Positions 1 to 52,409 of a stretch of 64,000 nucleotides of DNA are shown piece by piece. Every line of letters starts with the position of its first letter. The first letter of the stretch is position 1. Location: positions 1 to 64,000 of the IMG/VR virus record IMGVR_UViG_3300024308_000018, one strand, 5' to 3'. The notes beneath the pieces are model-generated. The model was not told the origin of the DNA and ran no database searches. It worked only from the letters and a program-made list of their open reading frames with translations. Made by a program: the position numbers and the translations under genes.

Positions 1-120
1 AGCGTCGGGGTCTTCCTCTTCAGCGTCGGGGTCTTCCTCTTCAGCGTCGGGGTCTTCCTCTTCAGCGTCGGGGTCTTCCTCTTCAGCGTCGGGGTCTTCT
101 TCAGCGTCGGGGTCTTCTTC
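1..120 (-). repeat. Coding tandem repeat (VNTR): 4 x 21 bp plus 2 x 18 bp, encoding (E)EEDPDA
   Basis: agcgtcggggtcttcctcttc at 1, 22, 43 and 64; agcgtcggggtcttcttc at 85 and 103. Unit lengths are multiples of 3 and in frame with the CDS. Confidence 0.95.
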
Positions 121-1473
121 AGTGGCCGGATCTTCCTCTTCCTCTTCCTCGTCAGCAGGTTCTTCACCGCTGGCCTTAGCTTCCCACTTCGCGACGATGG
201 CGTCCTTGTCCTCTTCGGTAGTATCCGCAGCCTTCAGAGCCTTGGCATCTTCCTTATACTCGGCACGGGCAGCGGCTTCCGCTTCCTTGTCGTCACCAGC
301 GGCTTCGATCACAGACTTCAGAGCTTCAGCCATTCGCAGGCTGATGTCTTCGGCACGCTTGCGAGCATCGAGCTTGGATTTCTCCACGTCGTTCTCTTTG
401 GTGCGCTCGGCTTTCTTGTCATCCGACTGGCGAGTGACGTCACCTTCCAGATCCTCGCCGAAGTCCTCGTCATCGTCGACGTCTTCCTCTTCCATCGCGT
501 GCTCAAGCGGCTTCATCTTGCTTGCCTTGGCATTGCGGAGATCTTCATCCTGCAATCCGGCCTTGGCGCGGCGCTCTTCTTTCTGCTGCTCGGCCTTGGC
601 GGTTTCAACGCGGGCCACTTCGGCAACCTGCTTGGCGATTTCGCTATTCTCTTTGGCGTCGAGGATGCGGCGCTGCTTCTGCTCTTCCTCGCGCTTGGCC
701 TTGGCTTCACGTTCAGCGTTACGTGCAGCAGCCTGTTGGGCACGCTCTTCCTTCTCACGCTCGTTACGTTCGCGGACACGTTGGCGCTCTTTGTTGAGCT
801 GGTACTCCTTGATCATCTCGGGAGTAACAACGGTCTGCGGCCAGCGGCCCTTCGGCATTACCGGAAGGTCGGAGGCGATGCGGTCATACTCGGCGGTGGT
901 TACCGTTTCGTACAGGCCGTTGAGGTCGACGATCTTACCGCCCTGTGACGGACGGCCGAAGCGCATACCGATCTTATCGCCACGGCGCAGCTTGATAGGG
1001 CGCTTGTTGGTTTGAATCAGGTACTCGGGATCGCGAACAATGCGCCACTGATAGTTAGTGGTATCGACACCGAACGCTTCAGTGCCATCCCGACCGAATG
1101 CCTCGTTGCGCACAGCGCCCAGCGGTTTGAAGCGGTCGGAATCAAACTTCTGAGTAGCGGCGTCGTCGAGGATTTCTTTGGTCTTGGCAGTGGGCTGATC
1201 GCCTTGCAGGATAACGCGCTTGATGCGCTTGCCTGTGCTCGCAATCTTGTTGGCGCGCTGCTTGGTGATCTTGAACAGTTTCTTCGGCGCGTCCTCGGTT
1301 ACGATGTAGTAATCCTTGGAACGTGCAACGGGGCGGATGCCAACCCGCGTCCCTTCTTTGACTTGCGCCCGAGCAGTACCGCCAGTGACAGTGAAGGTGC
1401 TGCCCTTGTAGATGTACCACTCGAAATCTTGCTGCGCAGAAGTCGAGGCAATAGAGCTAATCGACAGTTGCAT
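1..1473 (-). CDS. Putative internal head/scaffold-like protein (3' end outside window): SxSA-tagged N-terminus, two small beta-rich repeats, coiled coil, acidic tail
   Basis: Absent from the ORF track because it runs off the edge. Read by hand from ATG at 1473 (preceded by AGGA): MQLSISSIASTSAQQDFEWYIYKG..., open to position 1. Contains an E/R/K-rich coiled coil and EEEDPDA repeats. The + strand ORF 122..1015 is its Ser-rich shadow. Confidence 0.85.
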   Translation of the reverse strand, partial: MQLSISSIASTSAQQDFEWYIYKGSTFTVTGGTARAQVKEGTRVGIRPVARSKDYYIVTEDAPKKLFKITKQRANKIASTGKRIKRVILQGDQPTAKTKEILDDAATQKFDSDRFKPLGAVRNEAFGRDGTEAFGVDTTNYQWRIVRDPEYLIQTNKRPIKLRRGDKIGMRFGRPSQGGKIVDLNGLYETVTTAEYDRIASDLPVMPKGRWPQTVVTPEMIKEYQLNKERQRVRERNEREKEERAQQAAARNAEREAKAKREEEQKQRRILDAKENSEIAKQVAEVARVETAKAEQQKEERRAKAGLQDEDLRNAKASKMKPLEHAMEEEDVDDDEDFGEDLEGDVTRQSDDKKAERTKENDVEKSKLDARKRAEDISLRMAEALKSVIEAAGDDKEAEAAARAEYKEDAKALKAADTTEEDKDAIVAKWEAKASGEEPADEEEEEEDPATEEDPDAEEDPDAEEEDPDAEEEDPDAEEEDPDAEEEDPDA

Positions 1474-1505
1474 ACTTGGATCCTAATGTTGAATTCAACA
1501 ACGTT

Positions 1506-1513
1506 GTTTACAG
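1506..1513 (-). promoter_or_regulatory. CTGTAAAC putative phage promoter element
   Basis: Intergenic, about 30 nt upstream of ATG 1473. The same motif recurs upstream of several other genes. Confidence 0.6.
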
Positions 1514-29989: not shown

Positions 29990-30177
29990 TTGATCAGCCC
30001 CTTGATTTCCAAGGCCGCCAGCTCCTTGATTTCAGCCGGAGCGTCAATCTTCTTCAGAGCCTTGCGCAGCCAGCTGAGGTTGCCGCCACTTGCGTCAATC
30101 TTGCGGCGGAAGGATGGAAAGTCGTGGGTGTCAGCTTCCTTGGCAAGCCACGCATTGAGTTGATCCAACTTGCTCAT
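29986..30177 (-). CDS. Small hypothetical protein
   Basis: 63 aa, AAGGA RBS, stop overlaps the methyltransferase start. Confidence 0.7.
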   Translation of the reverse strand: MSKLDQLNAWLAKEADTHDFPSFRRKIDASGGNLSWLRKALKKIDAPAEIKELAALEIKGLIK

Positions 30178-30186
30178 AGAGGTTCC

Positions 30187-33103: not shown

Positions 33104-33112
33104 AGCTTACCC

Positions 33113-34098: not shown

Positions 34099-35291
34099 CA
34101 GTTGGTGCAGTGCATGAGGTACTTGATACGGAACTCTTTCATGTCGTAGTCCAACATGAACGCTTTGTACTTGCCGACTGGGCCGAACACCCGCATCAGG
34201 TGATCGCACTCACCGCCCTTGATTCCATTACCCAATGCCTTGAGCAGAAGTTGGAACAGGCGGATGTCAGCATTGAACGTGAACGTATCCTTGGTTGCGA
34301 ACTTGATCTTCTCAACCAGAGACTGGCCGTCGGTGCTGAACTTCAACAGAGCTTGGCCGGACTTCGCACTGAAGTTGAACTTCACGCTCTGGCCCTTCAG
34401 TGCCTTGTTCGCACTGACCAGCGCAGCTAACGTATTCACCGCCAACACCATATCGTGATGTCCGTTACCCGTGGCAGTTGCGGAGCCCAGCGTATCCAAC
34501 GCGATGTCGAACTTCTGGAAGTCTTCTTTCGAGCTACGTACCGGAGGCAGCAGCACCAAGAAGTTGTCGGCACTTGCAACGAAGTTCGCACCGTTGACAT
34601 AGAACTGGGTGTCGGCATCGCCCACGACTTTGTAGAGCAGCTTCAGCATGTCGGAGCCCAAGCTGATCTTGGTGTCAGGCACGCGCTCTTTGAACTCGGC
34701 CTCGTACAGCGCACTGATAAAGTTGCTGCTGGTGACGACCGTCAGCTGGCCGGACTTCAACGTGATGTGCGAGTTAACACTGGCGTCGGTGTAGAGGTCG
34801 GGGATGTACGACATATCGACCGCACGCTTCAGCTCGCTAACCACGTTCGGCGGCAGGATGTCCGCGTTGTTCTTCACTTCGATATTACGGATCGTCATGT
34901 CCAGCGACATCAGCTGGTCTTGCGAAACGTGACGCACGCTGATCTTGAGCTTGCTGTTGCGGGACTTGGCCAACATCTCGCCGCGCGTGAACTCGAACTT
35001 GATCAGGTCTTTGCGGACAACCGGAGACAGCTGAGAGAAGTCCAGCAGTGCGGCACCAACGCCTTCAATGCCGGAAGCCGACAGCTCATTGATGATGAAG
35101 GTGTCGATGGTGCGTCCGATCAGATAGACCTTGCTGCCAGTGCACACCACCATGTTGAGGTCTTCGATCATCTTGTCAGCTTCACTGAACTTGATTACCT
35201 CGTCGCACAGTTTGAGGCTCTTGCCGAAGAGGTTGCCATCGAGAGTAAAGCTGAAGTCTTCAATGGTCTTTGGAATCTGCGGTAACTGCAT
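34098..35291 (-). CDS. Putative DNA sliding clamp (beta-clamp-like)
   Basis: About 397 aa with a three-fold repeating alpha/beta pattern and a C-terminal Y.LM strand, downstream of the DNA polymerase. Start revised to ATG 35291 (AAGGA RBS). Confidence 0.5.
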   Translation of the reverse strand: MQLPQIPKTIEDFSFTLDGNLFGKSLKLCDEVIKFSEADKMIEDLNMVVCTGSKVYLIGRTIDTFIINELSASGIEGVGAALLDFSQLSPVVRKDLIKFEFTRGEMLAKSRNSKLKISVRHVSQDQLMSLDMTIRNIEVKNNADILPPNVVSELKRAVDMSYIPDLYTDASVNSHITLKSGQLTVVTSSNFISALYEAEFKERVPDTKISLGSDMLKLLYKVVGDADTQFYVNGANFVASADNFLVLLPPVRSSKEDFQKFDIALDTLGSATATGNGHHDMVLAVNTLAALVSANKALKGQSVKFNFSAKSGQALLKFSTDGQSLVEKIKFATKDTFTFNADIRLFQLLLKALGNGIKGGECDHLMRVFGPVGKYKAFMLDYDMKEFRIKYLMHCTN

Positions 35292-35565
35292 CAGCCGGAT
35301 CCTTGTAGTTTTGTGGGTCGCATTTCTCTGGGACAAACACTGTCCGCCCTTGAATAACCTTTACAGCAATGCGCATTCCGGTTGGCCCGTAAATGCCATT
35401 GAGGAAACCAATGACGTTGAAGCGCAGTGCCTCGGCCCCGAGCTGGGTGTACTCGACAGCAAAGTGCGGAGTACGCGCGTCCCATGACGTATTGGTCATC
35501 GCAGCGAGTGACAGGTAATCAACCTCGCCAAGTTCATTCAGAAGATTGCACGCTTGTTCGATCAT
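35260..35565 (-). CDS. Hypothetical protein
   Basis: 101 aa with a strong GGAGG RBS. Confidence 0.65.
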   Translation of the reverse strand: MIEQACNLLNELGEVDYLSLAAMTNTSWDARTPHFAVEYTQLGAEALRFNVIGFLNGIYGPTGMRIAVKVIQGRTVFVPEKCDPQNYKDPADAVTADSKDH

Positions 35566-35583
35566 GATTTGATCCTCCTACGG

Positions 35584-35606
35584 CAAAAGGGAGCCGAAGC
35601 TCCCTT
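35584..35606 (-). terminator. Rho-independent terminator
   Basis: aagggagc-TTCG-gctccctttt after the polymerase stop. Confidence 0.85.
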
Positions 35607-35608
35607 GT

Positions 35609-38600: not shown

Positions 38601-38746
38601 TCTTCCGTGGGAACGTGGTCGAGAACTATGACAACGCGCGCAGCAGGCTTGTCCACCTTCTGCCGAATACACTGCACGTTGTAGTGCTCTTCTCCCCTGA
38701 ATGCCTTGGGCACCTTGATTGGTAGATTAAGGTGTTGGATTTTCAT
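35609..38746 (-). CDS. polA: Family A DNA polymerase with a 3'-5' exonuclease and an N-terminal uracil-DNA-glycosylase-like domain
   Basis: Exonuclease motifs DTET, NAKFD and YAALD; polymerase motifs TGRTS..PNLQQVP, DYSAHEVR, R...K...FG..Y, NSPVQG and VHDS. Start revised to 38746. Confidence 0.95.
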   Translation of the reverse strand: MKIQHLNLPIKVPKAFRGEEHYNVQCIRQKVDKPAARVVIVLDHVPTEDLKSGKLLSGGTGGTINRVMHYAATAFKTNTHKMEDLDLLFVNWNCWKTYTMSEERRQESDSYFAERVLGIIDEYGADYVVTCGRAPFQHLGRKYFDRAPDKPNGWLGNSLPMTTPEGRKVRLIPNLSINSLLNSKSITSSAYLLGYYARNFLPIFNEGKMPFKIKPVKTGEKRNWNMIVVDTMKKFHLMMKVLRRAKYVAIDTETDGLHRINVNMLTLQFSADGETSYVLPFMHNDSPFTSKQLEEIRQTLQAYFEYDNRNRLHIYTNAKFDLNILRNCIKVRSFINNVWDIIAGDFAMDENMKVLSQVTGHWYYSLANLSMQYGCTAYLEANFGKQNRALIKDVPLDEDVCEYAALDTIIPWRIAFQQMKKAASMGYEKYQSIVGEQISDQIHTFSTLEYTGAATDVDYLFRLSMPDSPINSLLRETVQKFKDTDEVARADSRLKKRANVPEVGLFGKIKDRMFKLSSREHLQTLFFDVMKLEPVVVSETKIRDNGKPEAKIDKAFQEKYKDNPVVAMYTSMTKLLKLRNAYVKSLIKKFGEDIDFNTTKRLRATYNYDRIVTGRTSANDPNLQQVPSRGPMAKYIKRLLISTMGYLVIKVDYSAHEVRGWSIISGDQGVADVFEQGAKLRRQYRLVPDPYIAKRLEYEGDVHKINAAYFFGIPIYEVVKDIRNAVKTVIFGLIYQQGDEGLANSTKRPVEEIVDIKARFLNRFPIGLKWFDKIKNFARKNYYVESPLGRRRNLFAFLLDETLQGARSTISRSERQSVNSPVQGFGSDLMMTAIRMMERRCFDHWKEHGVWPDIRFSISVHDSLSVEAAYDWVWFAIKIIEECMTKDVAKEMERRHGMKFTSIPEIDFEIGGSEATVKSWDFSYAAIRDIFKASLEFKRDELGDKQLADPKTFDRILDSMMEDQYDLMPEWMQQQLWANGIKIRSMCKENPLDEVTRRRAKKWRQEIETNEPLLQKIIEDEERAKNGGAKEAEPKKKRRLKRKAA

Positions 38747-38776
38747 ACGGCCACTCGGTTGAAGTGTTACCAGCTT

Positions 38777-38784
38777 CTTTACAG
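38777..38784 (-). promoter_or_regulatory. CTGTAAAG putative promoter element for the polymerase
   Basis: Between a terminator and ATG 38746. Confidence 0.55.
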
Positions 38785-38790
38785 TTTTCG

Positions 38791-38820
38791 GAAACAAGAA
38801 AGGGAGCACTAGGCTCCCTT
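38791..38820 (-). terminator. Rho-independent terminator
   Basis: aagggagc-ctagt-gctccctttcttgtttc. Confidence 0.8.
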
Positions 38821-39330: not shown

Positions 39331-42300
39331 TTACTTCTTGGGCTCGTCGGCGGTGGGGCGCACGCGGATTTCCGAGAGCGTCTTGACCACGGCCTTGAGG
39401 TTGGTAATGGTGTAACCAGCTTTCTGCAACTGGGACAGCACGCGCTTGGCTTCCGTGGGGTTAGCCACGAAGTTGATCGCCATGCTTTCGTGCAGTTTCC
39501 AAGTCGCGTACTTGGCGGTGGCACCGACCGATACCTTGCCGACGAGCTTGCGCGCGTGCGGGTTGGTCTTCAGGTCGATCATCACGCGCATACGGTCACG
39601 CATGAAGGACGGATATGCCTTCAGGATGTTGGGCTTCTGGTTGTCGATGTGGCGCGTGCGGAAGAACTCGATAACTTCGTTCTTCAGTTTGTACGCAACC
39701 GGGTAGAGGAACTTCGAACGGCCAGACTCGCTGAACACGTTCTGGATCTCTTCCAGTCGCTTGGCACTTGCCTTGTCGAACGGGCCTTCACCGAACACTG
39801 AATCCAAGTAATCAAGGTGAGCGTAGAAGTCCTTGATATACAGGGAGTCGGCATAGACGTACTCGCCGAACACTTTGAACCCGAAGCTCTTGACCAGTTC
39901 CTTGTAGTCACTGTCGCTGGTGTTCACGTAGATAGCCAGCAGGCCGTTATACACGGTCGGGTAAACTTCGATGCTCTTGTCGGGAGCGGCAGCGGCAGCT
40001 TTCGGGGTACGCGTGCGCGGAACCTTGTTGCCCGCAACGTCGACGTCCTTGCCAGTAGGCATAACGATCTTGCCTTCGGTGTCGGTGTCGCTGAGTACAG
40101 GCAGACCCGAGTTGATGGCCTTGCCCTCCTTGACGTTCTGCTTGCGAGTACCGCTGGCCTTCGCGCCTTCGGTTGCAACTTCGGCCCCTTCGCGGATCTG
40201 TTTGTCGATGTCGCGTTGGATTGCTTCTTCTTGCTTCCGACGTTTGTCCTCGGCCTTGGTGATTGCATCCTCGACTTCGGAGTCGCGCTTGGTCTTCGGC
40301 ACGGGCTTGACTCCGCCCTTGCTTCCCTTGGCGAACACGCTGCTACGCAGTACCGGATCCTTGATGGCGTTGACCGACACGTGGACACGACCTACCCCGA
40401 CAATGCGCTCACTGCCATCCTGATACTGCACTCGGACGGTGGTGAACGTCGGGTCAGCTTGACGCCGCTCGACGTCTGCGAACTTCTCGTCGTTGACCTT
40501 GCCAATACCGACGATGATACCGTTGCCCCATTCGGTGTGAACCGGAACCCCGTCAAACAACTTGCGGTGCTCTGCCTTGTTGTCGTTGTACGGAACCTTG
40601 GAGCCGCGCGACTTGTAGTAGTCACGGAACGATACCAGACCAAAGCCCCAGCGGTCGTGGATGCGTTGGTTCGGAACATACGGCACGTTGTCCAGCATGC
40701 GATAGCCAGCAGCAGGATCAACAGGCGCACCTTCAATGACGTGCATCGCGGACGCAGTTGACAGGCGCATCTCTGCGAACTCTGCGGCGTCGATAGCACT
40801 CAGGTTTGCCTTGGCGACGAAGTGTTGCAGGCTCTCGTCTTCCGGATCCATGTAGGTGTCGAAGTTGATCCACTTACCAGTCTTATCCAGAATGGTTTCG
40901 GCGTTGTAGGGCGGCTCTTGCATTGCTGCCCACTTCTTCACCTCGTCGTAGCGTGGGTTGCCCGCTTCGTCCCAGATGGTGGTCTTCACATCCTTGGCCG
41001 TCACACGCGCTACCTTCAGCACCTCCATCGTGTTGTTGGTCATCACCCAGTCGATGAAGATTACTTCACGCTTCATGTCACCCGGCTTTCCGTTCTCGTC
41101 GAAGATTGCGGAGTTGAAGTCCGGACGCATGATACGTGCATGCGACTGGCGAACGCGACCCGGTGACCACGGAGTGTCACAGCGGATAATGCGCGAACCG
41201 ATCTGCATGTTGTAGCCTTCAGTGATCCGCTGCTCGTTCGCCACCAGAATGCGGGCTTCAGAGTTGTTGCGGAACTGTTCGACCAGCTCTTTGGTGTCGG
41301 CACCTTTGCCCAGACGGATGGCGTAACGCGCCAGCTTCGGAGCGAGCTTCTTGAGCGACTTGATCACGGAATCGCCGGAGCGGGTGTATTCGCACAGCAC
41401 GATAACCTTGCCCGTGTCTTCCGGTTTCCAGTATTCCAGATCCTTGTCCGGAGTGACGTTGGATTCCGGCAGGCGGAAACGTTGCGGCGTACCCTGCTTC
41501 TGCTTACGTGCCAGATAGCGCTTGCCCTGATACACGCACAGGTCGAGTTCGAACGGACGGCAGCCCGCTTTCCACTCAAACATCTGGTGCATCTGTGCGA
41601 TCTCTTCGCCGTCATCATTGCGCTGCGGCTTGGCAGGCTCGATGAAGTTGGGCTGGACTTCGAAGTGCTTCTTGATCCGCTCGACAATCTTGTGCATCTT
41701 GACGGGGATGAAGTCTTTCACGCCCTGCTCTTTGAAGATCTCGACAGCTTCTGGGTCACCCATCGGGTCAGACAGGATCATTTCCATGCGCTGCCAGTAT
41801 TGGCGCAGCTTCACGGACGACGCAATCATCGAGCCGATAGAGTCAGCCGCTTCTTCCTCTTCTTCGAGCACTGCATCTTCATCAGCCAGCTCGTCGTCTT
41901 CGGATTCCGCGTCCTCGTCTTTCTTGACCGGGCCCTTGCGCTTGATCTCGGCCATCACCTCTTCGACCAACGCAGCGTACACAGCGTCATAGGCAATCTT
42001 GTGCAGGCCGGAGTGCGGCACGCTCGGATCGTCGATGTCGAAGTGCAGGAAGGTCTCGATAGGGTTGGGCAGCATGAACGCCCACTCTTTCCGCTTGTAC
42101 GATGCCATCGTTGCATAGTTGCTGAAGCGACCACGCATTGCGGCAACGCGCTTGTTGAACAGGTCAACAGCGTCCAGAGTTACAGCGCCATCACCGTTGG
42201 AGCGGGAGGCGTCTTCGATGTCCTGACCGTCGCCGAAGATACCCGGCGTGAACATTGCGGCTTGACCAACAACGTCAGACACCTTGTCGGGCACCAGAGT

Positions 42301-45300
42301 ACCGGTAGCCAGACGCTTGAACTTGACAGTGGATTGCAGGAACATCTGCTTGATAGCAGCGTGCACGCCGGAGCCAGAGTTCTTGACGCGGTGCGATTCG
42401 TCGAGGATCACGTAGTTGAACTTGTAGCGACGCAGGAATTCAGTCTGCGCCATGATAGTCACGCGCTCGCCACCGATGTCGGCATCGAAGCGGCCATGGT
42501 GGTTGGCGATGAACGTATCGGCGAACACGAAAATGGTGTTGACCGGAGCGTTGGACAGCAACTCCTGAATGCGCTCAAGGCCGTGCTCTTTCACGGTCTC
42601 GTTGGTGATCGGAACCACGTTCCAGTCGTGAGTGACCAGCAGCAAGTCTTCGCACCAGTTGGCGACCAGACCCTTCGGCGCGATTACCGCAGGTTTAATC
42701 GGCTCGTCCATGATCGACGCACACCACAGAATGTCGTGCAGGCCGAGGATGGTCTTACCGCCACCCGGATGGATGTCGAGCGTCGCGTAGGGCGGCGGCA
42801 CTTTCTTCGACAGCTGAGTCTGCGCCTTGAACTGGTGCGGCATCAGCGTGAAGTCGTGCGTACCTGCAATCTTCAGCGACTCTTCGCTCACGCTATCGTC
42901 AGGCTGGTTGGCCTCAACGTGGGCTTCGACGGCCTCGAAGTAACGGCGGGTGTCGGGAATCGCATGACCGAACATGAACGCGGTCGGCAGCACTGCACGC
43001 ATCAGGAAGCCGGACGGCATCAGGTTGGTTTCGTACAGGGCGCTGAACACTTTCTTCCGGTCGGCGTCGAACACAGCACGCGACATCGCAACCAGCAACG
43101 CACCGCCCAGATAACCACGCAGGTTACCCATGGTATGCAGGCCGGACTTCGACGGGCTGTCGATGAAGCGCCAGTCGTTCACGATCTCAGTGCTTTGACC
43201 CTGACGTTCCCAGAAGCCACGCAGGCGGCCACCGCGATACGAATCACGGGCGTCTTCGATTGCCAGCAGGACGCGGTACATTGCGATCTCGCCATCGTTC
43301 GCCAGACGGCCTTGCGCGGAGTACATGCCAGCGTCGATATAGTTGGCGGGCTCGGCTTCGGGATCGTGCTCCTGAGTGTACGCCATCTGGATCGCTTTCG
43401 CTTGGTTGTTGATTTCCTCGAAGGAGGGAACCAGACCCTTCTGCTGCATCCAGTCGTAGGTGCGGACGATCATGCACGCGGCATAACGCAGCATGTGCGG
43501 GCTACGGGCAGACTTCAGATCGTTCCAGTTGTTATTGTTGTAGCCAGCGTGCGGCACAGCAAACTCGTACTTGGTGCCGATACTAGCGGACATCGCGCTG
43601 ACCACGCGGTCGGTCACAGCACCTACCAGCATCAAGCGCTCGTTGGTTGCGTTGTAGCGCAGGAACTGGCCGAGTACGCGGGAGCCAGTGCGGATGTTCG
43701 GCGCTTCGCCTTCGGCTGCAAAGTTGAAGCCCAAGCTATCACCGATTTCCAGATCGGCAGCGGGTACTGCGCCGCTCTCCTGAATGGAGTCGAAGTTCAG
43801 GAAGTCCGCAGAGGTCTGGATAACCAAACCGGAAGTCGGATCCGTACCAACGACAACGTTGGAGAAGCGGTTGGCCTTGGCGCTGAAGTCGTTGTGCAGC
43901 GACGCGATGTTGACAGTGGTCTCACCGTTGACGCGCTCCAAATCGAGTTCCAGCACCTTGCGGTACTCGGTGCTCAAGTGGCCGACGGGGATGCCGTGCT
44001 CGTACAGAGTGCTCATGCCGTCGGCAAGTGCGGATTCTGCTTTCGCTACGACTTCGAGGTCGATGTCTTGGGTACGCGGGTACACGACCAGCGCGCCGTT
44101 GCTGCTGACTGCTACGCCCTTGTCATCGCCGATGGAGTCGGAGATGGGGAAGCCCAGCTTTTTGCGCATGTCGTTCAGGCGCTTGATCTCGGTGCTCGAA
44201 GTCAGGCAGCGCGGAACGTTGCTGCGGCTACCAGTGCGAGAACCGGACAGGCGGAAGAAGCCTTGGCACCAGCGGTTGAACCAACGAGCAAGCAGCAGCT
44301 CGGCCGCAGAGTGATCGTCGTTCTGGATGATGTAGTCGACCACAGGGTTCGGCAGGTGCAGGGTGTAACCCACGTGCACTACGAAACCGCAGTATGGCAA
44401 CATCGCATCGTGCATGGAAGCCATGCTACCAGCGTTGGTGCTACCGCTCAAGAGCGCGGCGGCGCGGGCGGTGTGTGCTTCAGCCAGTACACGACGCACG
44501 GTGAACTTGAACATCGGGCCGAGGTTAACGCGCACGGGATCAGGCACGAAGCGCGACGGGAAGAACACGGTGTTACCGATGGCTTCCTTGACGCCGGGGA
44601 TTTTCTGCAACGCAGCATTCAGCACGCTGAAGTTGGTGTCGAGATCGAAGTGCACAGTCTTCGACTTCAGGTTGGCCTTGGAGGGCACGTCGCCGAAGAA
44701 GAACTTGTGGAACGCCAGCGCTGCCTTGTGCACCGCTTGCCCGAACTCGGACTGCATGCCGCCGAAGTAGAAGTCACGGAACTCCTTGCTGGCTGATGTG
44801 TCGTCGGGCTTGCCAGACTTCTCGAACTCGGGCGAGCTGCCGTTGTACTGGAAGTAGGGGTCAATACCGGAGCCAACTTCGGAAACCAGCGAGTCGTTGC
44901 GGTAGGTCTGAAACGCGTTCCAGTAACCTTCGTTGGTGCCCGCAATCTTCACAACTTGCAATTCGTAGCCGTCGTTCCCGCGCTTGATTACCAAGTCGCT
45001 GGTGTTCGACATTGCCGCAGTGATCATGCCGCGAGTGGCGGACGTAATCATGGGCGTGCCGCTCTGCATCTTGGCGAGTACGGAGCCGCAGCTGGATTCG
45101 AACACTTGGGAAATCAGGGCAGCCGCACGACCGTTAGTGCCACGCATCTTTTCGAAGATCAGGGTGTTGCTGATCTCGACACTATTACGCATCAGCGCAG
45201 ATAAGAAGGACTGATACAGCTTGATGCGAACGTTCAAGGTGATCAGAGACTCAGCGAACGGGCCGTATTGGTCGGGACGCGGAGTGTTAGCCACGTCGCG

Positions 45301-45480
45301 CGTTGCCTTGGTCAGGCGATCAGGCGGAAACAGCGCATTGGAGAATACGGTTTCGTACTTCGGGTCGAGCGGGCGCGCCGTCAGCTCTGCCCCAATCTGA
45401 GCGCGCAGCTGGCTGGCTACGCCACCCGTTTCCTTGGGCGCTGCCGACTCAGATTGGAAGACGTTGAAGGGATATTGCAT
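39331..45480 (-). CDS. Giant SNF2-like (SF2) helicase/ATPase, 2049 aa
   Basis: Motifs L.PHQ, PGGGKT, P...V.NW, ILDESH..KN, LATGT, EGYNMQ and W.P....Q...RI.R. Preceded by an ~870-aa N-terminal extension beginning MQYPFNVFQSESA. Confidence 0.9.
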   Translation of the reverse strand: MQYPFNVFQSESAAPKETGGVASQLRAQIGAELTARPLDPKYETVFSNALFPPDRLTKATRDVANTPRPDQYGPFAESLITLNVRIKLYQSFLSALMRNSVEISNTLIFEKMRGTNGRAAALISQVFESSCGSVLAKMQSGTPMITSATRGMITAAMSNTSDLVIKRGNDGYELQVVKIAGTNEGYWNAFQTYRNDSLVSEVGSGIDPYFQYNGSSPEFEKSGKPDDTSASKEFRDFYFGGMQSEFGQAVHKAALAFHKFFFGDVPSKANLKSKTVHFDLDTNFSVLNAALQKIPGVKEAIGNTVFFPSRFVPDPVRVNLGPMFKFTVRRVLAEAHTARAAALLSGSTNAGSMASMHDAMLPYCGFVVHVGYTLHLPNPVVDYIIQNDDHSAAELLLARWFNRWCQGFFRLSGSRTGSRSNVPRCLTSSTEIKRLNDMRKKLGFPISDSIGDDKGVAVSSNGALVVYPRTQDIDLEVVAKAESALADGMSTLYEHGIPVGHLSTEYRKVLELDLERVNGETTVNIASLHNDFSAKANRFSNVVVGTDPTSGLVIQTSADFLNFDSIQESGAVPAADLEIGDSLGFNFAAEGEAPNIRTGSRVLGQFLRYNATNERLMLVGAVTDRVVSAMSASIGTKYEFAVPHAGYNNNNWNDLKSARSPHMLRYAACMIVRTYDWMQQKGLVPSFEEINNQAKAIQMAYTQEHDPEAEPANYIDAGMYSAQGRLANDGEIAMYRVLLAIEDARDSYRGGRLRGFWERQGQSTEIVNDWRFIDSPSKSGLHTMGNLRGYLGGALLVAMSRAVFDADRKKVFSALYETNLMPSGFLMRAVLPTAFMFGHAIPDTRRYFEAVEAHVEANQPDDSVSEESLKIAGTHDFTLMPHQFKAQTQLSKKVPPPYATLDIHPGGGKTILGLHDILWCASIMDEPIKPAVIAPKGLVANWCEDLLLVTHDWNVVPITNETVKEHGLERIQELLSNAPVNTIFVFADTFIANHHGRFDADIGGERVTIMAQTEFLRRYKFNYVILDESHRVKNSGSGVHAAIKQMFLQSTVKFKRLATGTLVPDKVSDVVGQAAMFTPGIFGDGQDIEDASRSNGDGAVTLDAVDLFNKRVAAMRGRFSNYATMASYKRKEWAFMLPNPIETFLHFDIDDPSVPHSGLHKIAYDAVYAALVEEVMAEIKRKGPVKKDEDAESEDDELADEDAVLEEEEEAADSIGSMIASSVKLRQYWQRMEMILSDPMGDPEAVEIFKEQGVKDFIPVKMHKIVERIKKHFEVQPNFIEPAKPQRNDDGEEIAQMHQMFEWKAGCRPFELDLCVYQGKRYLARKQKQGTPQRFRLPESNVTPDKDLEYWKPEDTGKVIVLCEYTRSGDSVIKSLKKLAPKLARYAIRLGKGADTKELVEQFRNNSEARILVANEQRITEGYNMQIGSRIIRCDTPWSPGRVRQSHARIMRPDFNSAIFDENGKPGDMKREVIFIDWVMTNNTMEVLKVARVTAKDVKTTIWDEAGNPRYDEVKKWAAMQEPPYNAETILDKTGKWINFDTYMDPEDESLQHFVAKANLSAIDAAEFAEMRLSTASAMHVIEGAPVDPAAGYRMLDNVPYVPNQRIHDRWGFGLVSFRDYYKSRGSKVPYNDNKAEHRKLFDGVPVHTEWGNGIIVGIGKVNDEKFADVERRQADPTFTTVRVQYQDGSERIVGVGRVHVSVNAIKDPVLRSSVFAKGSKGGVKPVPKTKRDSEVEDAITKAEDKRRKQEEAIQRDIDKQIREGAEVATEGAKASGTRKQNVKEGKAINSGLPVLSDTDTEGKIVMPTGKDVDVAGNKVPRTRTPKAAAAAPDKSIEVYPTVYNGLLAIYVNTSDSDYKELVKSFGFKVFGEYVYADSLYIKDFYAHLDYLDSVFGEGPFDKASAKRLEEIQNVFSESGRSKFLYPVAYKLKNEVIEFFRTRHIDNQKPNILKAYPSFMRDRMRVMIDLKTNPHARKLVGKVSVGATAKYATWKLHESMAINFVANPTEAKRVLSQLQKAGYTITNLKAVVKTLSEIRVRPTADEPKK

Positions 45481-45483
45481 CGC

Positions 45484-46008
45484 TTACTTTCCTCGTCCGG
45501 TGTTGGAGATTTCGACCCAGAGGGGCCGCGTGACTTTCGTTACAGCGATAAGGGCGCGAGCCAGTCCCGCTGCCTCTTCAGGCTTCAGGTTCTGGAACAG
45601 GACAGGATCGTCATAAACGATTTCGGCCTGTGCCACACCGCGCAGCTTCTCGCGGTAGTAGGTGTCAAAGCTCTGCACCTCAGACTGGTTGAGGCTGCTG
45701 ACTTCTGCGCTCTCGGCATCTTTGGTTACCGCGTTGCGCATCCCGATCAGGATGGACGACAGCTTGATAACGAGGGCAACAGGGTCTTCCTTCTCTTCAG
45801 GCGAGATGATACCGGACGCGAGCAGCGCTTCAACGTTGGAGTCGTAAGCGAACGGGTCAGTAGAGCCTTCAGGTTCCGCAACTTCGTCAGCGGAATGTGA
45901 CTGAATCTTGAACCCATCATGCGACAGGATAGAGCGCGCATAGCTTCCAAGCGGCCCTCCATCATGTGACAGACGAGTCAACAGTTTCGTTAGATCTTTA
46001 CCTGCCAT
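45484..46008 (-). CDS. Hypothetical protein
   Basis: Start revised to ATG 46008 (AGGAG RBS). Confidence 0.7.
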   Translation of the reverse strand: MAGKDLTKLLTRLSHDGGPLGSYARSILSHDGFKIQSHSADEVAEPEGSTDPFAYDSNVEALLASGIISPEEKEDPVALVIKLSSILIGMRNAVTKDAESAEVSSLNQSEVQSFDTYYREKLRGVAQAEIVYDDPVLFQNLKPEEAAGLARALIAVTKVTRPLWVEISNTGRGK

Positions 46009-48000: not shown

Positions 48001-48804
48001 TTACGCGAAGGCGTGACCTTTGATGATTTCGGACAGCTTCTTGAAATACTCGGGAGCGTGACCGAACACACGACGGTAGTAGTCGAGCAGAGTCTTGCTG
48101 CTGTTGGCGGCAGCGCTCTCGCTCAGGTGCACGTCGGGGTACTTGATGTTGTCGCTGGGCAGTACCGCGATCACCGCTTCACGGCTCACGCTGAACACTT
48201 CGCCGTCCATGCTCTGAACAGCCAGCGCTTCTTGCCCGTCAGCGGACTTGCTCACGTAGGCGATGAAGCCAACGTCGACTTGCTTGTCGTCGCGCACGAA
48301 GGACACGATGTCGGAACCTTCAGCAGCGGACAGACTGGCAGCGAAGTTGGCGCACGCTTTACGCAGGATCGGGTCGCGGCCGATTTCAACAGCGATGTCG
48401 CTGGAGCAGGACTGCATCATATCCGCGAGTTCGGCCGGGTCTTCGCTCACGCTACGCACCAGCATTTGCTGATCGCCGGAGCTACGCAGAGCCCACAACT
48501 TCTCGTTGGCATCCATGAACATGTTGGAGGACAGCGCGGTCATGTTGCCAGCAGCGGTAGCAGGCAGCACTTCGTGGGCCGGGGCCATCATGGCACGGAA
48601 GATCGCTTCGTTGGCGCCACGCTCTTCCATCATTACGACAGAGCCGGGAATGGTGGACATGCGGTGGCCGCTGGCAGCAGACAGAGCAACCAGCATCTCG
48701 TCGGCGGACGACATGGAGGCAATGCCCTGCACGGTAGCGATCACGCTAACGATGTTGGAAGAGGAATGAGCAACTTCGGTATTCTTGATTTGAGCAGACA
48801 GCAT
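48001..48804 (-). CDS. Probable virion structural protein
   Basis: 267 aa, AGGAG RBS, followed by a hairpin; contains internal HLSESA. Confidence 0.55.
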   Translation of the reverse strand: MLSAQIKNTEVAHSSSNIVSVIATVQGIASMSSADEMLVALSAASGHRMSTIPGSVVMMEERGANEAIFRAMMAPAHEVLPATAAGNMTALSSNMFMDANEKLWALRSSGDQQMLVRSVSEDPAELADMMQSCSSDIAVEIGRDPILRKACANFAASLSAAEGSDIVSFVRDDKQVDVGFIAYVSKSADGQEALAVQSMDGEVFSVSREAVIAVLPSDNIKYPDVHLSESAAANSSKTLLDYYRRVFGHAPEYFKKLSEIIKGHAFA

Positions 48805-50000: not shown

Positions 50001-51096
50001 TGTACGCCGCCTCAATCAGCTGAATGAGGGTTTTCATTGCGGGAAGCGTCACCAGACCTTGAGTCAGGCATTCGGCCGCCTCAAGGTTACGCATCTGCGC
50101 GATGGTATCCAGCAACCCTTGTTGCAGTGACGGGGTATTTGCACACCCAGCAATCACACGCATCATGAACATCGTGACGTAGCGTTCGGACTCCGCGTAA
50201 CGCTTCTCGTCGATGGGCACACCTTGCAGTGCACGCATGCGGGTGATCAGCGCAACGAGTTCGGGGGCCGGACGAATTGGAGCCACCAGATTCTTGATTG
50301 CAACGGACATCAGGGCCATCGCGGGCGCAAGGAACTGAGTCACCGACGTTTCGATCAGAGCACGTGCGCGGTCGCCGACACCGAAGCGGTAGACGTCATC
50401 ATCCAGATAGAGGCTCCAATACAGCGGGAACATGGCGGGCAATTCGCGCTGCCAGATCAGGTAGCTGTACTCGGCCCACACTTTCGGAACCATGATCCAC
50501 TCGGACACCGGAACGTTATCAACGATCTGACTCAGGGTAGTCGCAGCGTAAGCGCGGTTGGCGTAGATGTGGAAGTATTGGGGATCGCATTCGGTCTCCA
50601 ACACCATGCCGTTACGCAGCAGGTTCTTGGTTGCGGCACCCACTACATTGTAGAGAACGCGCAGCACAGGTTCAAGCAGCGTGGTGGCTTGGGTCTTTGC
50701 CAGCTCGGTGCGCGGCACAAACACGGTGGCAAACTTGGTGCGGCTATCGCCCCAGATTACCAGACCGCGACCGCGACTGTCTTCCGGCGTAGGCCAGACA
50801 AACTTGCTCTTGCCTTTGATGGGCTTGAGTGCGAAGGTGAACGCGATACCCGCATCTTGCGTCACAATCTGAGGCGCATCTTCAATGTAGCCGATACTGA
50901 TTTGGTTCGGCGCATAGAACATGTTGATCAGCGTGAAGTCGATTGCGAATGGTGCGAGCAGGGATCCGGCAGCACTGGATTTCAACGTGGAGAGCACAGA
51001 CCCGAGGATCGGCCCTACACGATCAACGCCGGAGATGTTGTCCTGAAAGAACGACATCCCCGCGCTGGGTGCAGTTTTGAATGTGGTTTTCCACAT
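49987..51096 (-). CDS. Hypothetical protein
   Basis: 369 aa, GGAG RBS. Confidence 0.7.
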   Translation of the reverse strand: MWKTTFKTAPSAGMSFFQDNISGVDRVGPILGSVLSTLKSSAAGSLLAPFAIDFTLINMFYAPNQISIGYIEDAPQIVTQDAGIAFTFALKPIKGKSKFVWPTPEDSRGRGLVIWGDSRTKFATVFVPRTELAKTQATTLLEPVLRVLYNVVGAATKNLLRNGMVLETECDPQYFHIYANRAYAATTLSQIVDNVPVSEWIMVPKVWAEYSYLIWQRELPAMFPLYWSLYLDDDVYRFGVGDRARALIETSVTQFLAPAMALMSVAIKNLVAPIRPAPELVALITRMRALQGVPIDEKRYAESERYVTMFMMRVIAGCANTPSLQQGLLDTIAQMRNLEAAECLTQGLVTLPAMKTLIQLIEAAYNAGN

Positions 51097-51107
51097 AGAG
51101 CACTCCC

Positions 51108-52409
51108 TTACTTCATGGCGGCAACGAGATTGCGACGTTGGCTTTCATCCATGCCCAGCAGGCTGGCGACTTCGTTGATCTTCTGAAGCGTCATCGAGCC
51201 AGCCTTGGAACCGCGCGTCGGCAGGATACTGAATTCCAGCCACTCACGACCTTGCTGCCCGCGAACAACCTTGTAGGTGATCGCGTTGTTCTTGCGTTGG
51301 CTGGTCATGCCGCCGCTATACATGCTGCTGACAATGGCAACGACTTCGTTGATTGCTGCGGCGCGTTCGCGGGGGCTCATGCCCTTGACCAGACGCACGA
51401 AGATCTTGTGGTTCGAGACGCGCACGCCGTCGATGATCTGCACGTCTTTGCCGTTGATGTTGTGGGTCTTGAGGCCGAGCGCAGTTGCTTTACGCATGTG
51501 GTCGGTGCTACGCCCAACAGGACGACGGTCGCCAAACGCCGGAGTACCGTCAATCGCGAGCAGGCGGTTAACGGACGCTTTCAGCTGCGGCAGCGACTTG
51601 AACTCGGAACCGAACGGGAAGGTGCCCGGCGCTTTGCTGTCAACCAGACTGGTGATGAAGCGTGCGGTCTTGCCCGTCATGGTATTCAGGGAGCTGGTGA
51701 TCACCATGATGTACGTGGGGTACGTGTACCCGTCATCGCTGGTGAAATCCGCAACCGTGATATACGACTGGTAGTTAACGAGGGAGCCGCTGCTGCCTGC
51801 AATGTAGTGCACCAGAGAGATCTTGGTGTAGCGATCTTTCTCGATGGTGGACTTCAGGTAGCGACCGACAGAAGCCGCGAGGCTCTGGTGTTCTGCGGGA
51901 ACTTCGTCTTTCGCTGCTTGCGACAACTTGAACCAGCGGTCGCGAATGATAGTAGCTTCCTTGATGGTTGCGGCTACCGATGCAGCGGTGTCCTTGGCCG
52001 TCTTCATCTTGCTGAAGTTGGGGGACATGAGCAGTTGATACGCTGCGTTCAACTCAGTGATTGTCTGGTTGAGGATCGCAAGGTTGCGGGCAGCGCGGGC
52101 ACGGGATTGTGCGGTGTCGAGTTTGAGACCTTCGAGATCGGTAACGTCGTCGAGCACCGGGTGCGCAGCACGCGCAGGACGAACAGGCTGCTTGGAGACA
52201 AGCGTGCCTGACTCAATCTCCGCCGATGCAGAATTCAACTTGGCACGCACCTTCAGAGAAGAAGGGCGCTGCTTCAAGTCCAGCACTGCGTCGAGTTCGG
52301 TTTGCATGGAACTGACGGAAGTGATTAGCGGACTGACGTGCGCCCTCAACTCAGTAACGGTGCGACTGGCAGTTATCTTCTGCAACGTTGCACTTGGTTG
52401 ATTGGACAT
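51108..52409 (-). CDS. Probable virion structural protein
   Basis: Start revised to 52409 (GGGAG RBS), directly behind a TAATTT motif; contains internal LNSASA. Confidence 0.55.
   Translation of the reverse strand: MSNQPSATLQKITASRTVTELRAHVSPLITSVSSMQTELDAVLDLKQRPSSLKVRAKLNSASAEIESGTLVSKQPVRPARAAHPVLDDVTDLEGLKLDTAQSRARAARNLAILNQTITELNAAYQLLMSPNFSKMKTAKDTAASVAATIKEATIIRDRWFKLSQAAKDEVPAEHQSLAASVGRYLKSTIEKDRYTKISLVHYIAGSSGSLVNYQSYITVADFTSDDGYTYPTYIMVITSSLNTMTGKTARFITSLVDSKAPGTFPFGSEFKSLPQLKASVNRLLAIDGTPAFGDRRPVGRSTDHMRKATALGLKTHNINGKDVQIIDGVRVSNHKIFVRLVKGMSPRERAAAINEVVAIVSSMYSGGMTSQRKNNAITYKVVRGQQGREWLEFSILPTRGSKAGSMTLQKINEVASLLGMDESQRRNLVAAMK

What the first reader, a model, noticed from the sequence alone, without database searches (positions are those of the whole stretch)
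1..52409. The SxSA tag recurs outside the cassette, including at internal sites of probable head proteins
Seen: N-terminal MQLSISSIASTSA (1473), MQYPFNVFQSESA (45480) and MRTLFRSLSA (20250). Internal FKIQSHSA (46008 gene), VHLSESA (48804 gene) and KLNSASA (52409 gene). I did not see it at the starts of the polymerase, SF2 helicase, clamp-like, methyltransferase or exonuclease genes. Inference: a genome-wide prohead protease recognition motif that could be used to predict the internal proteome. The internal hits are individually weak.
Basis: partly seen in the sequence, partly recalled or inferred. Interest (0 to 1): 0.7.

Follow-up and report, generated by a model that had tools for sequence, protein, structure and literature searches.

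The report
Short head-targeting tag on phage proteins
A giant phage puts the same eight-residue tag (Met-x-Ile-x-Leu-Ser-x-Ser) at the start of a dozen unrelated proteins and repeats its Ser-x-Ser core in its capsid, portal and scaffold-like proteins, which probably marks what is packed into the head and trimmed by the head protease, though no cleavage has been measured.

Summary
The window is bases 1-64000 of a 229.7-kb jumbo phage related to Dickeya JA29, Erwinia Alexandra and Pseudomonas Lu11/PaBG.

"SxSA" is only part of the real unit. That unit is an N-terminal leader, M-x-Φ-x-Φ-S-Φ-S, followed by A in half the cases. It sits on at least 12 proteins that are otherwise unrelated. S-x-S-[AG] starts within the first 16 residues 15 times against 2.35 expected. 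Nearly all of these proteins lie in the virion and effector modules.

The same S-x-S-[AGS] core occurs:
- 16 times in a 765-aa acidic protein next to the capsid gene (1.9 expected);
- at two conserved places in the capsid propeptide;
- at the portal N-terminus.

In Lu11/PaBG both serines become alanines: in Lu11's leaders, at the portal and second capsid sites, and in PaBG's scaffold-like protein.

The phage encodes a protease with the T4 gp21 fold.

The three internal hits are conserved in orthologues. However, the bare motif is no commoner inside virion proteins than inside other proteins.

Cleavage and the scissile bond are inferred, not shown. Verdict: partly supported; a new variant of the capsid-targeting and prohead-protease theme.

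The parts
1..1473 (-). Tagged gene. The leader MQLSISSIASTSA (nt 1435-1473) is followed directly by a KMPT-N domain. The ORF runs off the record start and probably continues at the record's far end.
   Evidence: Pfam KMPT-N, E 9e-9; phrog_35607. Orthologues keep the tag: JA29 MLSQSA, Alexandra MILSVSA, close relative G001 identical.
20313..22520 (-). Tagged gene of the cassette, 735 aa, leader MINISTSA (nt 22497-22520).
   Evidence: Orthologues: JA29 MEIEVSLSA, Alexandra MELMVSLSA, Lu11 MRIQLAVAA. It is a paralogue of the next gene, the only paralogous pair among the tagged genes.
22524..25169 (-). Tagged gene of the cassette, 881 aa, leader MLHISTSA (nt 25146-25169).
25179..26018 (-). Tagged gene, 279 aa, leader MKIQLSISA (nt 25992-26018).
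   Evidence: The G001 orthologue starts MQVQLSLS-NLPTPPE, so S-x-S is kept and the A is lost.
26386..26904 (-). Tagged gene, 172 aa, leader MQIQLSLSG (nt 26878-26904).
   Evidence: Orthologues: G001 MQIQLSLSA, Alexandra MQVFVSLSA.
26914..27630 (-). Tagged gene, 238 aa, an ADP-ribosyltransferase of the polyvalent-protein type, leader MKIQLSMSK (nt 27604-27630).
   Evidence: Pfam ART-PolyVal, E 3.6e-24. The JA29 orthologue starts MELLISLSK, so S-x-S-K is conserved.
39331..45480 (-). Tagged 2049-aa DarB-like helicase, N-terminus MQYPFNVFQSESA (nt 45442-45480).
   Evidence: phrog_21391, 1170 bits. Orthologues keep an N-terminal S-x-S-A although the rest of the N-terminus is unalignable: JA29 MQIFSTSA, Alexandra ..MISTSA, PaBG MGSLFTLNSLSA. 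Lu11 has none at its start.
45889..45912 (-). Internal site FKIQSHSA, residues 33-40 of the 174-aa protein 45484-46008.
   Evidence: In 7 homologues of 57-92% identity, S37, A40 and D41 are invariant, S39 is kept in 7 of 8 sequences, and the middle residue varies freely.
48001..48804 (-). The last lies about 36 residues before a conserved C-terminal tail.
   Evidence: The VHLSESA column reads SVSAA in JA29 and Alexandra, AV-AA in PaBG and VATAAA in Lu11. The family is enriched in sites: JA29 4 vs 0.36, Alexandra 4 vs 0.49; Lu11 has 7 [SA]x[SA][AG] vs 2.2. ASMSSAD is also residues 70-76 of the capsid protein.
52221..52241 (-). Internal site KLNSASA, residues 57-63 of the 433-aa protein 51108-52409 (phrog_36434).
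   Evidence: It aligns with KKLLSVSA in Alexandra and RNLLSLSA in JA29, just before the conserved body of the protein begins.
20221..20250 (-). MRTLFRSLSA at the start of gene 19084-20250: probably a chance match, not a tag.
   Evidence: It lacks the M-x-Φ-x-Φ frame. The 67%-identical G001 orthologue starts MRTFWPAPPRP, without S-x-S. No orthologue was found in JA29, Alexandra, PaBG or Lu11.
27867..38809 (-). Replication block (exonuclease, SF2 helicase, DNA polymerase and others) without any tag; a negative control inside the window.
   Evidence: PHROG matches; N-termini listed. The MKIQHLNL start of the polymerase is the conserved polymerase N-terminus and carries no S-x-S.

Best explanation
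The S-x-S-A strings are the visible half of a head-assembly signal used by this phage and its relatives.

Many proteins destined for the inside of the capsid start with an eight-residue leader, M-[EQK]-I-[QL]-[LV]-S-L-S, usually followed by A. A longer form has the same hydrophobic start, a short linker and then S-x-S-A. Several of these proteins have domains typical of injected effectors: an ADP-ribosyltransferase, a 2H/LigT-like enzyme, a DarB-like helicase and KMPT-N proteins.

The same small-x-small core is also present:
- at two conserved places in the N-terminal propeptide of the major capsid protein;
- at the N-terminus of the portal;
- 16 times in an acidic zinc-ribbon protein encoded between the protease and capsid genes.

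Inferred mechanism. The leader brings the protein into the assembling prohead, as the T4 capsid-targeting sequence does. The phage's gp21-fold serine protease then cuts at or next to the S-x-S core. This would remove the leader, trim the capsid and portal proteins, and chop the scaffold-like protein into acidic peptides.

What is shown: the motif, its position, its conservation, the Ser-to-Ala switch between lineages, and the fold of the protease.
What is inferred: packaging, cleavage, which enzyme cuts, and the exact bond (after the second Ser, or after the following A/G).
For: 1. N-terminal enrichment is large and replicated. Observed vs expected: own genome 15 vs 2.35, G001 14 vs 1.3, JA29 16 vs 3.1, Alexandra 18 vs 2.8.
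2. The tagged proteins share nothing beyond the leader, apart from one paralogous pair. Their leader codons differ at synonymous positions and their upstream DNA is unrelated, so selection acts on the peptide.
3. The tags survive in orthologues whose neighbouring residues have diverged. The residue between the two serines varies freely.
4. The 765-aa acidic protein has 16 S-x-S-[AG] vs 1.9 expected (0 of 1000 shuffles). Its orthologues: G001 15 vs 1.75, Alexandra 6 vs 1.3, JA29 5 vs 1.5.
5. In 38 capsid-protein homologues, S-x-S occurs in a window at residues ~24-36 in 33 and in a window at ~56-80 in 27. The mature part has 0.0016 per residue. The second site lies at about 20% of the length. 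That fits the ~20% mass loss reported for PaBG's capsid protein (PMC7412058). It also fits the start of the 280-residue capsid chain in PDB 6wkk, by extrapolation.
6. The portal has STSA and SGSA just before its conserved core.
7. Ser and Ala switch together. Lu11's leaders read MKIQLAVA, MKIQLALA, MRIQLAVAA. The portal sites read ATAA in Lu11 and ATAG in PaBG. The second capsid site reads ATAS in Lu11 and APSA in PaBG. Scaffold-like proteins are enriched in A-x-A: PaBG 15 vs 3.8, metagenomic L113 22 vs 4.7.
8. The gene at 222754-223545 matches phrog_18299, head maturation protease, at E 4.5e-90. Its AlphaFold model (pLDDT 86.7) matches T4 gp21 at Z 10.4, then herpesvirus proteases at Z 6.8 and 5.3. 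His126 and Ser183 are invariant in 52 homologues.
9. The mature capsid part and the protease itself are almost free of the motif.
Against: - No cleavage site has been mapped in this phage or any relative, so cleavage and the scissile bond are unproven.
- The protease's known relatives cut after Glu (T4 L/I-x-E, phiKZ S/A/G-x-E). No Glu is conserved in the leaders.
- The first capsid site is followed by a nearly invariant G-E-[LIV]-N-A that persists even in RSL1, which lacks S-x-S there. That site may therefore obey another rule.
- Many internal sites are followed by D or E, so a hidden acidic requirement is not excluded.
- Internal motif frequency does not separate virion-module proteins from the rest.
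- Protease plus leader gave no usable verdict in the complex prediction.
- No residue next to the catalytic serine tracks the Ser or Ala type cleanly.
- Gene starts and module boundaries come from my own simple gene caller.
Confidence: 0.6

Rival explanations
1. The N-terminal leader is purely a capsid-targeting (docking) signal that is never cut, like the N-terminal 30 residues of P1 DarB. On this reading the protease keeps the Glu specificity of its T4 and phiKZ relatives and cuts elsewhere, for example after the S-[AG]-[DE] that follows many internal sites.
For: P1 DarB is targeted by its N-terminus with no known cleavage (PMC9024508). Half of the sites in the 765-aa protein, and the sites in the 46008, 52409 and capsid proteins, are followed by D or E. 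G-E is nearly invariant after the first capsid site. The protease has the gp21 fold.
Against: The acidic residue is not at a fixed distance from S-x-S at the second capsid site. It is missing at the portal site, at the 48804 site and at two of three 52409-family sites. The same S-x-S core, with the same Ser-to-Ala switch, is shared by the leaders and by sites where trimming is expected. One recognition system is the simpler reading.
Confidence: 0.2
2. The motif is read by a different enzyme. One candidate is the zincin domain (HEFAH) at the end of the 1381-aa protein encoded between the protease and the scaffold-like gene. Another is a host protease of the Prp type, which removes the MLKLNLQFF leader of ribosomal protein L27 and of phage 80alpha head proteins in Staphylococcus.
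For: HExxH is conserved in the JA29, Alexandra and G001 homologues. KMPT-N, a domain named for its fusion to metallopeptidases, follows the leader in the protein at 1473. Long-form leaders such as MCLIKLNL...STSA in Alexandra look superficially like the L27 leader; that comparison rests on my memory of the literature.
Against: No Peptidase_Prp match in the phage at E up to 10. Known hosts of the relatives are Gram-negative, and to my knowledge these lack the L27 extension and Prp. Lu11 has abundant Ala-type leaders, yet no homologue of the zincin protein was found there or in PaBG. A dedicated head protease is present in every relative examined.
Confidence: 0.1
3. The strings are chance or composition: Ser/Ala-rich low-complexity sequence, recent gene duplication, or a DNA-level element at gene starts.
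For: Internal S-x-S-[AG] is about 1.4-1.6 times the shuffle expectation in all protein classes alike. At least three N-terminal hits (20250, 8188, 214302) are not conserved.
Against: N-terminal enrichment is 6- to 11-fold in four genomes. Only one paralogous pair exists among the tagged genes; codons and upstream DNA differ. The motif is conserved across genera, with a coordinated Ser-to-Ala switch.
Confidence: 0.03

Closest known systems
Phage T4 capsid-targeting sequence of internal proteins (IPI-III, Alt), removed by the gp21 prohead protease
   Same: A leader of about 10 residues sits at the N-terminus of otherwise unrelated proteins that are packed in the head and injected; both sets include an ADP-ribosyltransferase. 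A gp21-fold protease is encoded in the head module. The core or scaffold protein carries many sites, and the capsid and portal proteins are trimmed.
   Different: T4 cuts after Glu in L/I-x-E. Here the conserved core is Ser-Φ-Ser (Ala-Φ-Ala in Lu11/PaBG), with no conserved acidic residue. The protease does not match the Pfam S77 model and carries an inserted Cys cluster. Packaging and cleavage are not demonstrated here.
phiKZ / SPN3US giant-phage propeptides (gp175 / gp245 proteases; S/A/G-x-E and A-x-E motifs)
   Same: Jumbo myoviruses in which many head and ejection proteins are processed at a short motif with a small residue at P3. Mass spectrometry defined their processed proteomes (PMC5694885, PMC10052503).
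   Different: It is a different phage clade. No Glu is at a fixed position. The tag is at the extreme N-terminus and only eight residues long, rather than ending a long propeptide.
Phage P1 DarB capsid-targeting signal and the Dar system
   Same: A DarB-like giant helicase and a PmgG-like protein are present. In P1, the DarB N-terminal 30 residues suffice for packaging (PMC9024508).
   Different: The P1 Dar proteins share no consensus tag. Here one consensus tag is shared by a dozen proteins.
Herpesvirus assemblin sites ((V/L)-x-A | S; from my knowledge of the literature)
   Same: The protease fold is related (Z 6.8 to the VZV protease, 5.3 to the HCMV protease). The residues around the presumed bond are small and uncharged. 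One site lies about 36 residues before a conserved C-terminal tail (the 48804 protein), like the scaffold M-site.
   Different: There is no sequence homology of the substrates, and the resemblance in specificity is untested.
Polyvalent proteins of phages and conjugative elements (Iyer et al. 2017, PMC5512222)
   Same: The same effector domains occur: ART-PolyVal, 2H/LigT, DarB-like helicase and metallopeptidase-associated domains. They are encoded next to virion genes and predicted to be injected.
   Different: Here the domains are separate small proteins, each with its own leader, rather than fused into one giant polypeptide.

Membership tests
T4-type capsid-targeting sequence / prohead-protease propeptide system | A prohead protease of the gp21/assemblin fold encoded in the head module | tested here: met
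   phrog_18299, E 4.5e-90. The model matches 5jbl_A at Z 10.4 over 138 of 165 residues. His126 and Ser183 are invariant.
T4-type capsid-targeting sequence / prohead-protease propeptide system | A short shared N-terminal leader on otherwise unrelated head-internal proteins | tested here: met
   At least 12 unrelated proteins in this genome carry it. Thirty short-form leaders in four genomes give the consensus M-[EQK]-I-[QL]-[LV]-S-L-S.
T4-type capsid-targeting sequence / prohead-protease propeptide system | Cleavage after Glu (L/I-x-E in T4; S/A/G-x-E in phiKZ) | tested here: not met
   No Glu is conserved in or after the leaders. The position after S-x-S is A, K, D, N, H or V.
T4-type capsid-targeting sequence / prohead-protease propeptide system | Sequence membership of the protease in Pfam Peptidase_S77 | tested here: not met
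   No PF03420 match in the genome at E up to 10. The similarity is seen only at the level of fold.
T4-type capsid-targeting sequence / prohead-protease propeptide system | The leader is removed in mature virions, and the leader suffices for packaging | not testable with these tools
   This needs virion N-terminomics and reporter fusions. The only published data are coarse SDS-PAGE and MALDI results for PaBG (PMC7412058).
Prp / L27-type leader (Staphylococcus, phage 80alpha) | A Prp cysteine protease (Pfam PF04327) in the phage or its host | tested here: not met
   No match in the phage genome. The host is unknown, so the host side could not be tested.
Signal-peptidase I substrates (A-x-A) | A hydrophobic core of about 10-15 residues before the small-x-small site | tested here: not met
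   The leaders are 8-17 residues long with alternating polar residues. True signal peptides in the genome look different, for example at 54363-54854 and 109691-110266.
Polyvalent-protein effector domains | Domains of that repertoire present in tagged proteins | tested here: met
   ART-PolyVal, E 3.6e-24, and KMPT-N, E 9e-9. phrog_755 RNA ligase/2H on the tagged gene at 199098-199655. phrog_21391 DarB-like helicase.

The most novel reading that the evidence does not exclude
A whole clade of jumbo phages (Salmondvirus, Alexandravirus, Lu11/PaBG and many uncultured relatives) uses a gp21-fold prohead protease that has lost the Glu specificity of its T4 and phiKZ cousins. It would recognise small-Φ-small instead. 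The substrates and the enzyme's preference would have shifted together from Ser to Ala in the Lu11/PaBG branch. The eight-residue leader MKIQLSLS / MKIQLAVA would then be a portable address label. It would define the complete set of packaged and injected effectors, and it could be used to load foreign proteins into these capsids.
Probability: 0.4. Interest if true: 0.75.

Novelty: new variant of a known kind. Interest (0 to 1): 0.62.

Why it matters
If the tag works as proposed, it gives a sequence-only way to list the proteins that these large phages carry inside the head and inject with their DNA. Here that list includes an ADP-ribosyltransferase, a 2H/LigT-like enzyme and a DarB-like helicase, all likely early weapons against host defences. 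Most tagged proteins have no known function, so the tag picks out candidates for study.

It would also add a third kind of specificity to the gp21/assemblin protease family, with small uncharged residues instead of Glu. The Ser-type and Ala-type lineages form a natural pair for studying how a protease and dozens of substrates change together. In practice, an eight-residue label could serve to pack foreign proteins into capsids, as the T4 and P1 signals already do.

I found no description of this leader in the papers I could search. That library does not include subscription journals.

Tried and rejected
- Prp-type protease: no PF04327 match in the genome.
- Pfam S77 model for the protease: no match. 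Foldseek against PDB gave only weak matches, with T4 gp21 first at E 0.1. The exhaustive structural aligner was needed.
- Sequence search of the protease against PDB: only spurious zinc-finger matches to its Cys cluster.
- Complex prediction of the protease with residues 1-30 of the MKIQLSISA protein: score 0.01, no verdict. It counts neither for nor against binding.
- Active-site determinant of Ser vs Ala type. In six genomes, Lys184 and Thr186 beside the catalytic Ser went with the Ser type and Met/Met with the Ala type. With nine more relatives the rule failed: Ser-type leaders also occur with YSIGV, YSVGF, HSVGF and YSIGM. Only YSMGM went with the Ala type, in 3 of 3 genomes.
- DNA-level element at gene starts: rejected, because codons and upstream DNA differ.
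- megablast of the helicase gene against isolated phages: no match.
- The search for related loci with a single protein found only one close relative.
- The first 400 residues of the helicase found nothing in relatives; its PHROG profile did.
- The 46008 protein has no orthologue in the five reference genomes. Seven metagenomic homologues were found instead.
- Search for mapped cleavage sites in the literature: only the PaBG statement that processing occurs, with no table text held. The phage Matilda preprint has nothing relevant. The Y3 GenBank record carries no mass-spectrometry notes.
- RSL1 was checked as a more distant relative. It has the protease but no leader family.
- One contig look-up failed because the service was busy.

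Full report
**Setting.**
The window is the first 64 kb of a 229,746-bp virus record with 56.6% G+C. All window genes lie on the minus strand. The major capsid protein (genome 214299-215399) is 44-48% identical to those of Dickeya phages JA11/JA29, Erwinia phages Alexandra and Y3 and Yersinia fHe-Yen9-02. It is 37-41% identical to Pseudomonas phages HRDY3, Lu11 and PaBG, and about 29% to Ralstonia RSL1. The phage is therefore an uncultured member of the Lu11/PaBG/Alexandra group of jumbo myoviruses.

Window content by PHROG and Pfam matches:
- tail-sheath paralogues and tail proteins at 1525-14511;
- a cassette of small genes at 19084-27630;
- a replication block at 27867-38809;
- a 2049-aa DarB-like helicase at 39331-45480;
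- head and neck genes at 45484-53227, including a head-tail connector.

**The observation.**
Counting S-x-S-[AG] over my 247 gene calls gives 93 occurrences, against 46.6 +/- 7.0 in shuffles that keep each protein's composition. Fifteen start within the first 16 residues, against 2.35 +/- 1.6 expected and a maximum of 9 in 1000 shuffles.

Fourteen of these lie in the 63 proteins of the virion/effector modules, where 0.75 are expected. One lies in the other 184 proteins, where 1.57 are expected. None is at the start of a replication gene.

Inside proteins the picture differs. One 765-aa protein outside the window holds 16 sites, against 1.9 expected. Without it, virion-module proteins have 26 sites vs 16.5 expected, and all other proteins have 36 vs 25.1. 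Both show the same mild excess. The bare motif is therefore informative at N-termini and uninformative inside proteins.

**What the tag really is.**
Seven proteins of this genome begin M-x-Φ-x-Φ-S-Φ-S: MKIQLSISA, MQIQLSLSG, MKIQLSMSK, MEIQLSVSA, MLLNLSLSA, MINISTSA and MLHISTSA. Others have a longer form with the same hydrophobic start and an S-x-S a few residues later: MNIELNLCVANASLSA, MNINLGLNMVSES, MNIALGLNQVKTES, MKLNIKTVSVSA, MQLSISSIASTSA and MQYPFNVFQSESA.

Beyond residue 20 these proteins are unrelated, apart from one paralogous pair. The leader codons differ at synonymous positions. The upstream DNA shares only a ribosome-binding site. Selection therefore acts on the peptide, not on the DNA.

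Thirty short-form leaders from this genome, its close relative G001, JA29 and Alexandra give the consensus M-[EQK]-I-[QL]-[LV]-S-L-S. The next residue is A in 15 and K in 6, with D, N, H and V also seen. Two orthologue pairs show this directly:
- MKIQLSISA-NLPTPPE here against MQVQLSLS-NLPTPPE in G001;
- MKIQLSMSK here against MELLISLSK in JA29.

**Replication in other genomes.**
I fetched the whole genomes of G001, JA29, Alexandra, PaBG, Lu11 and RSL1 and called genes the same way. N-terminal S-x-S-[AG], observed vs expected:
- G001: 14 vs 1.3
- JA29: 16 vs 3.1
- Alexandra: 18 vs 2.8
- PaBG: 6 vs 2.2
- Lu11: 2 vs 2.7

Lu11 does not lack the leader; it writes it with alanine. More than ten of its genes start MKIQLAVAG, MKIQLALAK, MKIQLAIAT, MRIQLAVAA, MNVHIAVAA or MIISLAAAA, including the orthologue of the window's 22520/25169 family. 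RSL1 has the protease but no leader family.

Nine metagenomic relatives were reached through their protease genes. They add more Ser-type leaders, for example MKLLVSLSS, MKIRVFTSTSA and MLRLASLSA, and one more Ala-type genome.

- 1473: conserved. JA29 has MLSQSA, Alexandra MILSVSA, and G001 is identical. In each case a KMPT-N domain follows directly.
- 45480: conserved, although the N-terminal 200-800 residues of the helicases cannot be aligned. JA29 has MQIFSTSA, Alexandra ..MISTSA and PaBG MGSLFTLNSLSA. Lu11 has none at its start.
- 20250: not conserved. The G001 orthologue starts MRTFWPAPPRP, and the string has no hydrophobic frame. It is probably chance.
- 52409 gene: KLNSASA aligns with KKLLSVSA in Alexandra and RNLLSLSA in JA29, just before the conserved body of the protein.
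- 48804 gene: VHLSESA aligns with SVSAA in JA29 and Alexandra and with Ala-rich strings in PaBG and Lu11. It lies about 36 residues before a conserved C-terminal tail. The family as a whole is enriched in sites. This protein also contains ASMSSAD, the same heptapeptide as at the second capsid site; it is the only 7-mer the capsid protein shares with any other protein.
- 46008 gene: in seven homologues the pattern S-x-S-A-D is kept while x varies.

**Capsid, portal and scaffold.**

Capsid. In 38 capsid homologues there is a conserved [LF]-S-x-S-(T)-G-E-[LIV]-N-A at about residues 28-36. A second, more variable S-[ML]-S-[ASG] lies at about residues 70-74. S-x-S occurs in these two windows in 33 and 27 of the 38 sequences, while the mature part has 0.0016 per residue. 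The second site lies at about 20% of the length. This fits the ~20% mass loss reported for PaBG's capsid protein (PMC7412058). It also fits, by extrapolation, the start of the 280-residue capsid chain of PDB 6wkk.

Portal. The portal (145912-147822, found through PaBG's annotated portal) has STSA and SGSA just before its conserved core. JA29 has STSS there and Alexandra SQSA. Lu11 has ATAA and PaBG ATAG.

Scaffold-like protein. The 765-aa protein lies between the protease and capsid genes. It is 22% acidic and has CxxC pairs typical of zinc ribbons. It carries 16 S-x-S-[AG] sites. Ser-type relatives are similarly enriched in S-x-S-[AGS]: 12-19 sites against about 3 expected. PaBG and the Lu11-like metagenomic genome L113 are enriched in A-x-A instead: 15 vs 3.8 and 22 vs 4.7. 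PHROGs calls this family an ATPase, and I found no support for that name. A core or scaffold protein that is chopped up during maturation fits better, but this is inference.

**The protease.**
Gene 222754-223545 matches phrog_18299, head maturation protease, at E 4.5e-90. It has no Pfam match. An AlphaFold model built on 52 homologues has pLDDT 86.7. It aligns to T4 gp21 (5jbl) at Z 10.4 over 138 residues. Herpesvirus proteases follow at Z 6.8, 5.3 and 3.8. His126 and Ser183 are invariant.

**Mechanism.**
The simplest reading joins these facts. One recognition system reads small-Φ-small in leaders, capsid, portal and scaffold. The dedicated head protease is the obvious reader. The hydrophobic start of the leader may serve for docking in the prohead, as the T4 targeting sequence does. 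The residue after S-x-S is free in leaders, so I favour cleavage after the second Ser. Cleavage after the following A or G is equally possible from sequence alone.

Points against, or still open:
- Relatives of the protease cut after Glu.
- G-E after the first capsid site is nearly invariant, even in RSL1.
- Many internal sites are followed by an acidic residue.
- No mapped site exists for this clade.
- The complex prediction gave no verdict.
- I found no clean active-site correlate of the Ser-to-Ala switch.

**What the tagged proteins are.**
Known domains among them are ART-PolyVal (26914-27630), KMPT-N (1-1473), a 2H/LigT-type RNA ligase family (199098-199655) and the DarB-like helicase. These are the domains that Iyer et al. 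(PMC5512222) found fused together in injected polyvalent proteins. Here each is a separate gene with its own leader. The remaining tagged proteins have no match.

**Novelty.**
The principle is known from T4, phiKZ/SPN3US and P1: an N-terminal targeting leader, a prohead protease, and processed capsid, portal and core proteins. The motif, the eight-residue leader, its spread in this clade and the coordinated Ser-to-Ala switch are not described in the papers I could search. I rate it a new variant of a known kind, resting on comparative sequence evidence only.

Noticed in passing
window 1-1473 and genome 228742-229746: The first gene runs off the start of the record. phrog_35607 matches its N-terminal part here, and its C-terminal part matches an ORF at the far end of the record. 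The lengths are in frame (1473 + 1005 nt = 826 codons), and the G001 orthologue is one 769-aa protein. The record is therefore probably a circular permutation cut inside this gene.
   Followed up: partly
window 5271-6404, 6416-7369, 12853-14511; genome 210928-212640: There are four tail-sheath-like genes: two of phrog_12249 and two of phrog_23. Large tail proteins with a shared N-terminal module lie at 8200-11595, 11598-12206 and 12206-12841. Relatives such as Erwinia phage Y3 were described as 'hairy' myoviruses, which might relate to these extra sheath-like proteins.
   Followed up: no
window 46801-47181: An HNH endonuclease gene (phrog_30443, E 3e-21) sits inside the head/neck gene block. 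Y3 and PaBG have an HNH gene at the same place.
   Followed up: no
window 54363-54854: A small protein has a classical signal peptide (MKKFVVAAVLLLSATAGAA) followed by repeats of the type SRPVSISRPITISRP. Its function is unknown.
   Followed up: no
genome 218609-222754 (outside the window): A 1381-aa protein lies between the protease and the scaffold-like gene. Its last ~160 residues carry a conserved HExxH (HEFAH) zincin motif. In JA29 and Alexandra the homologue is only 367-398 aa. This makes it a second candidate peptidase in the head module.
   Followed up: partly
JA29 106684-108654 and PaBG 56209-57897 (relatives): In relatives, two DNA enzymes carry tag-like starts: the NAD-dependent DNA ligase of JA29 (MTEFKSISA) and the topoisomerase I of PaBG (MHTSLSA). 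The ligase of this phage has no tag. These may be chance matches or packaged enzymes.
   Followed up: no
window 48700-48720 and genome 215172-215192: The heptapeptide ASMSSAD occurs both in the 267-aa protein of gene 48001-48804 and at the presumed maturation site of the capsid protein. Apart from paralogues and acidic low-complexity runs, very few 7-mers are shared between proteins of this genome.
   Followed up: partly
PV359490.1 (Salmonella phage Sen-NF, locus L092): This 108.5-kb record has the best capsid match (48%). Its genes are annotated end to end without any spacing, and the protease region is unannotated. It may be an incomplete or oddly annotated member of the same group.
   Followed up: no
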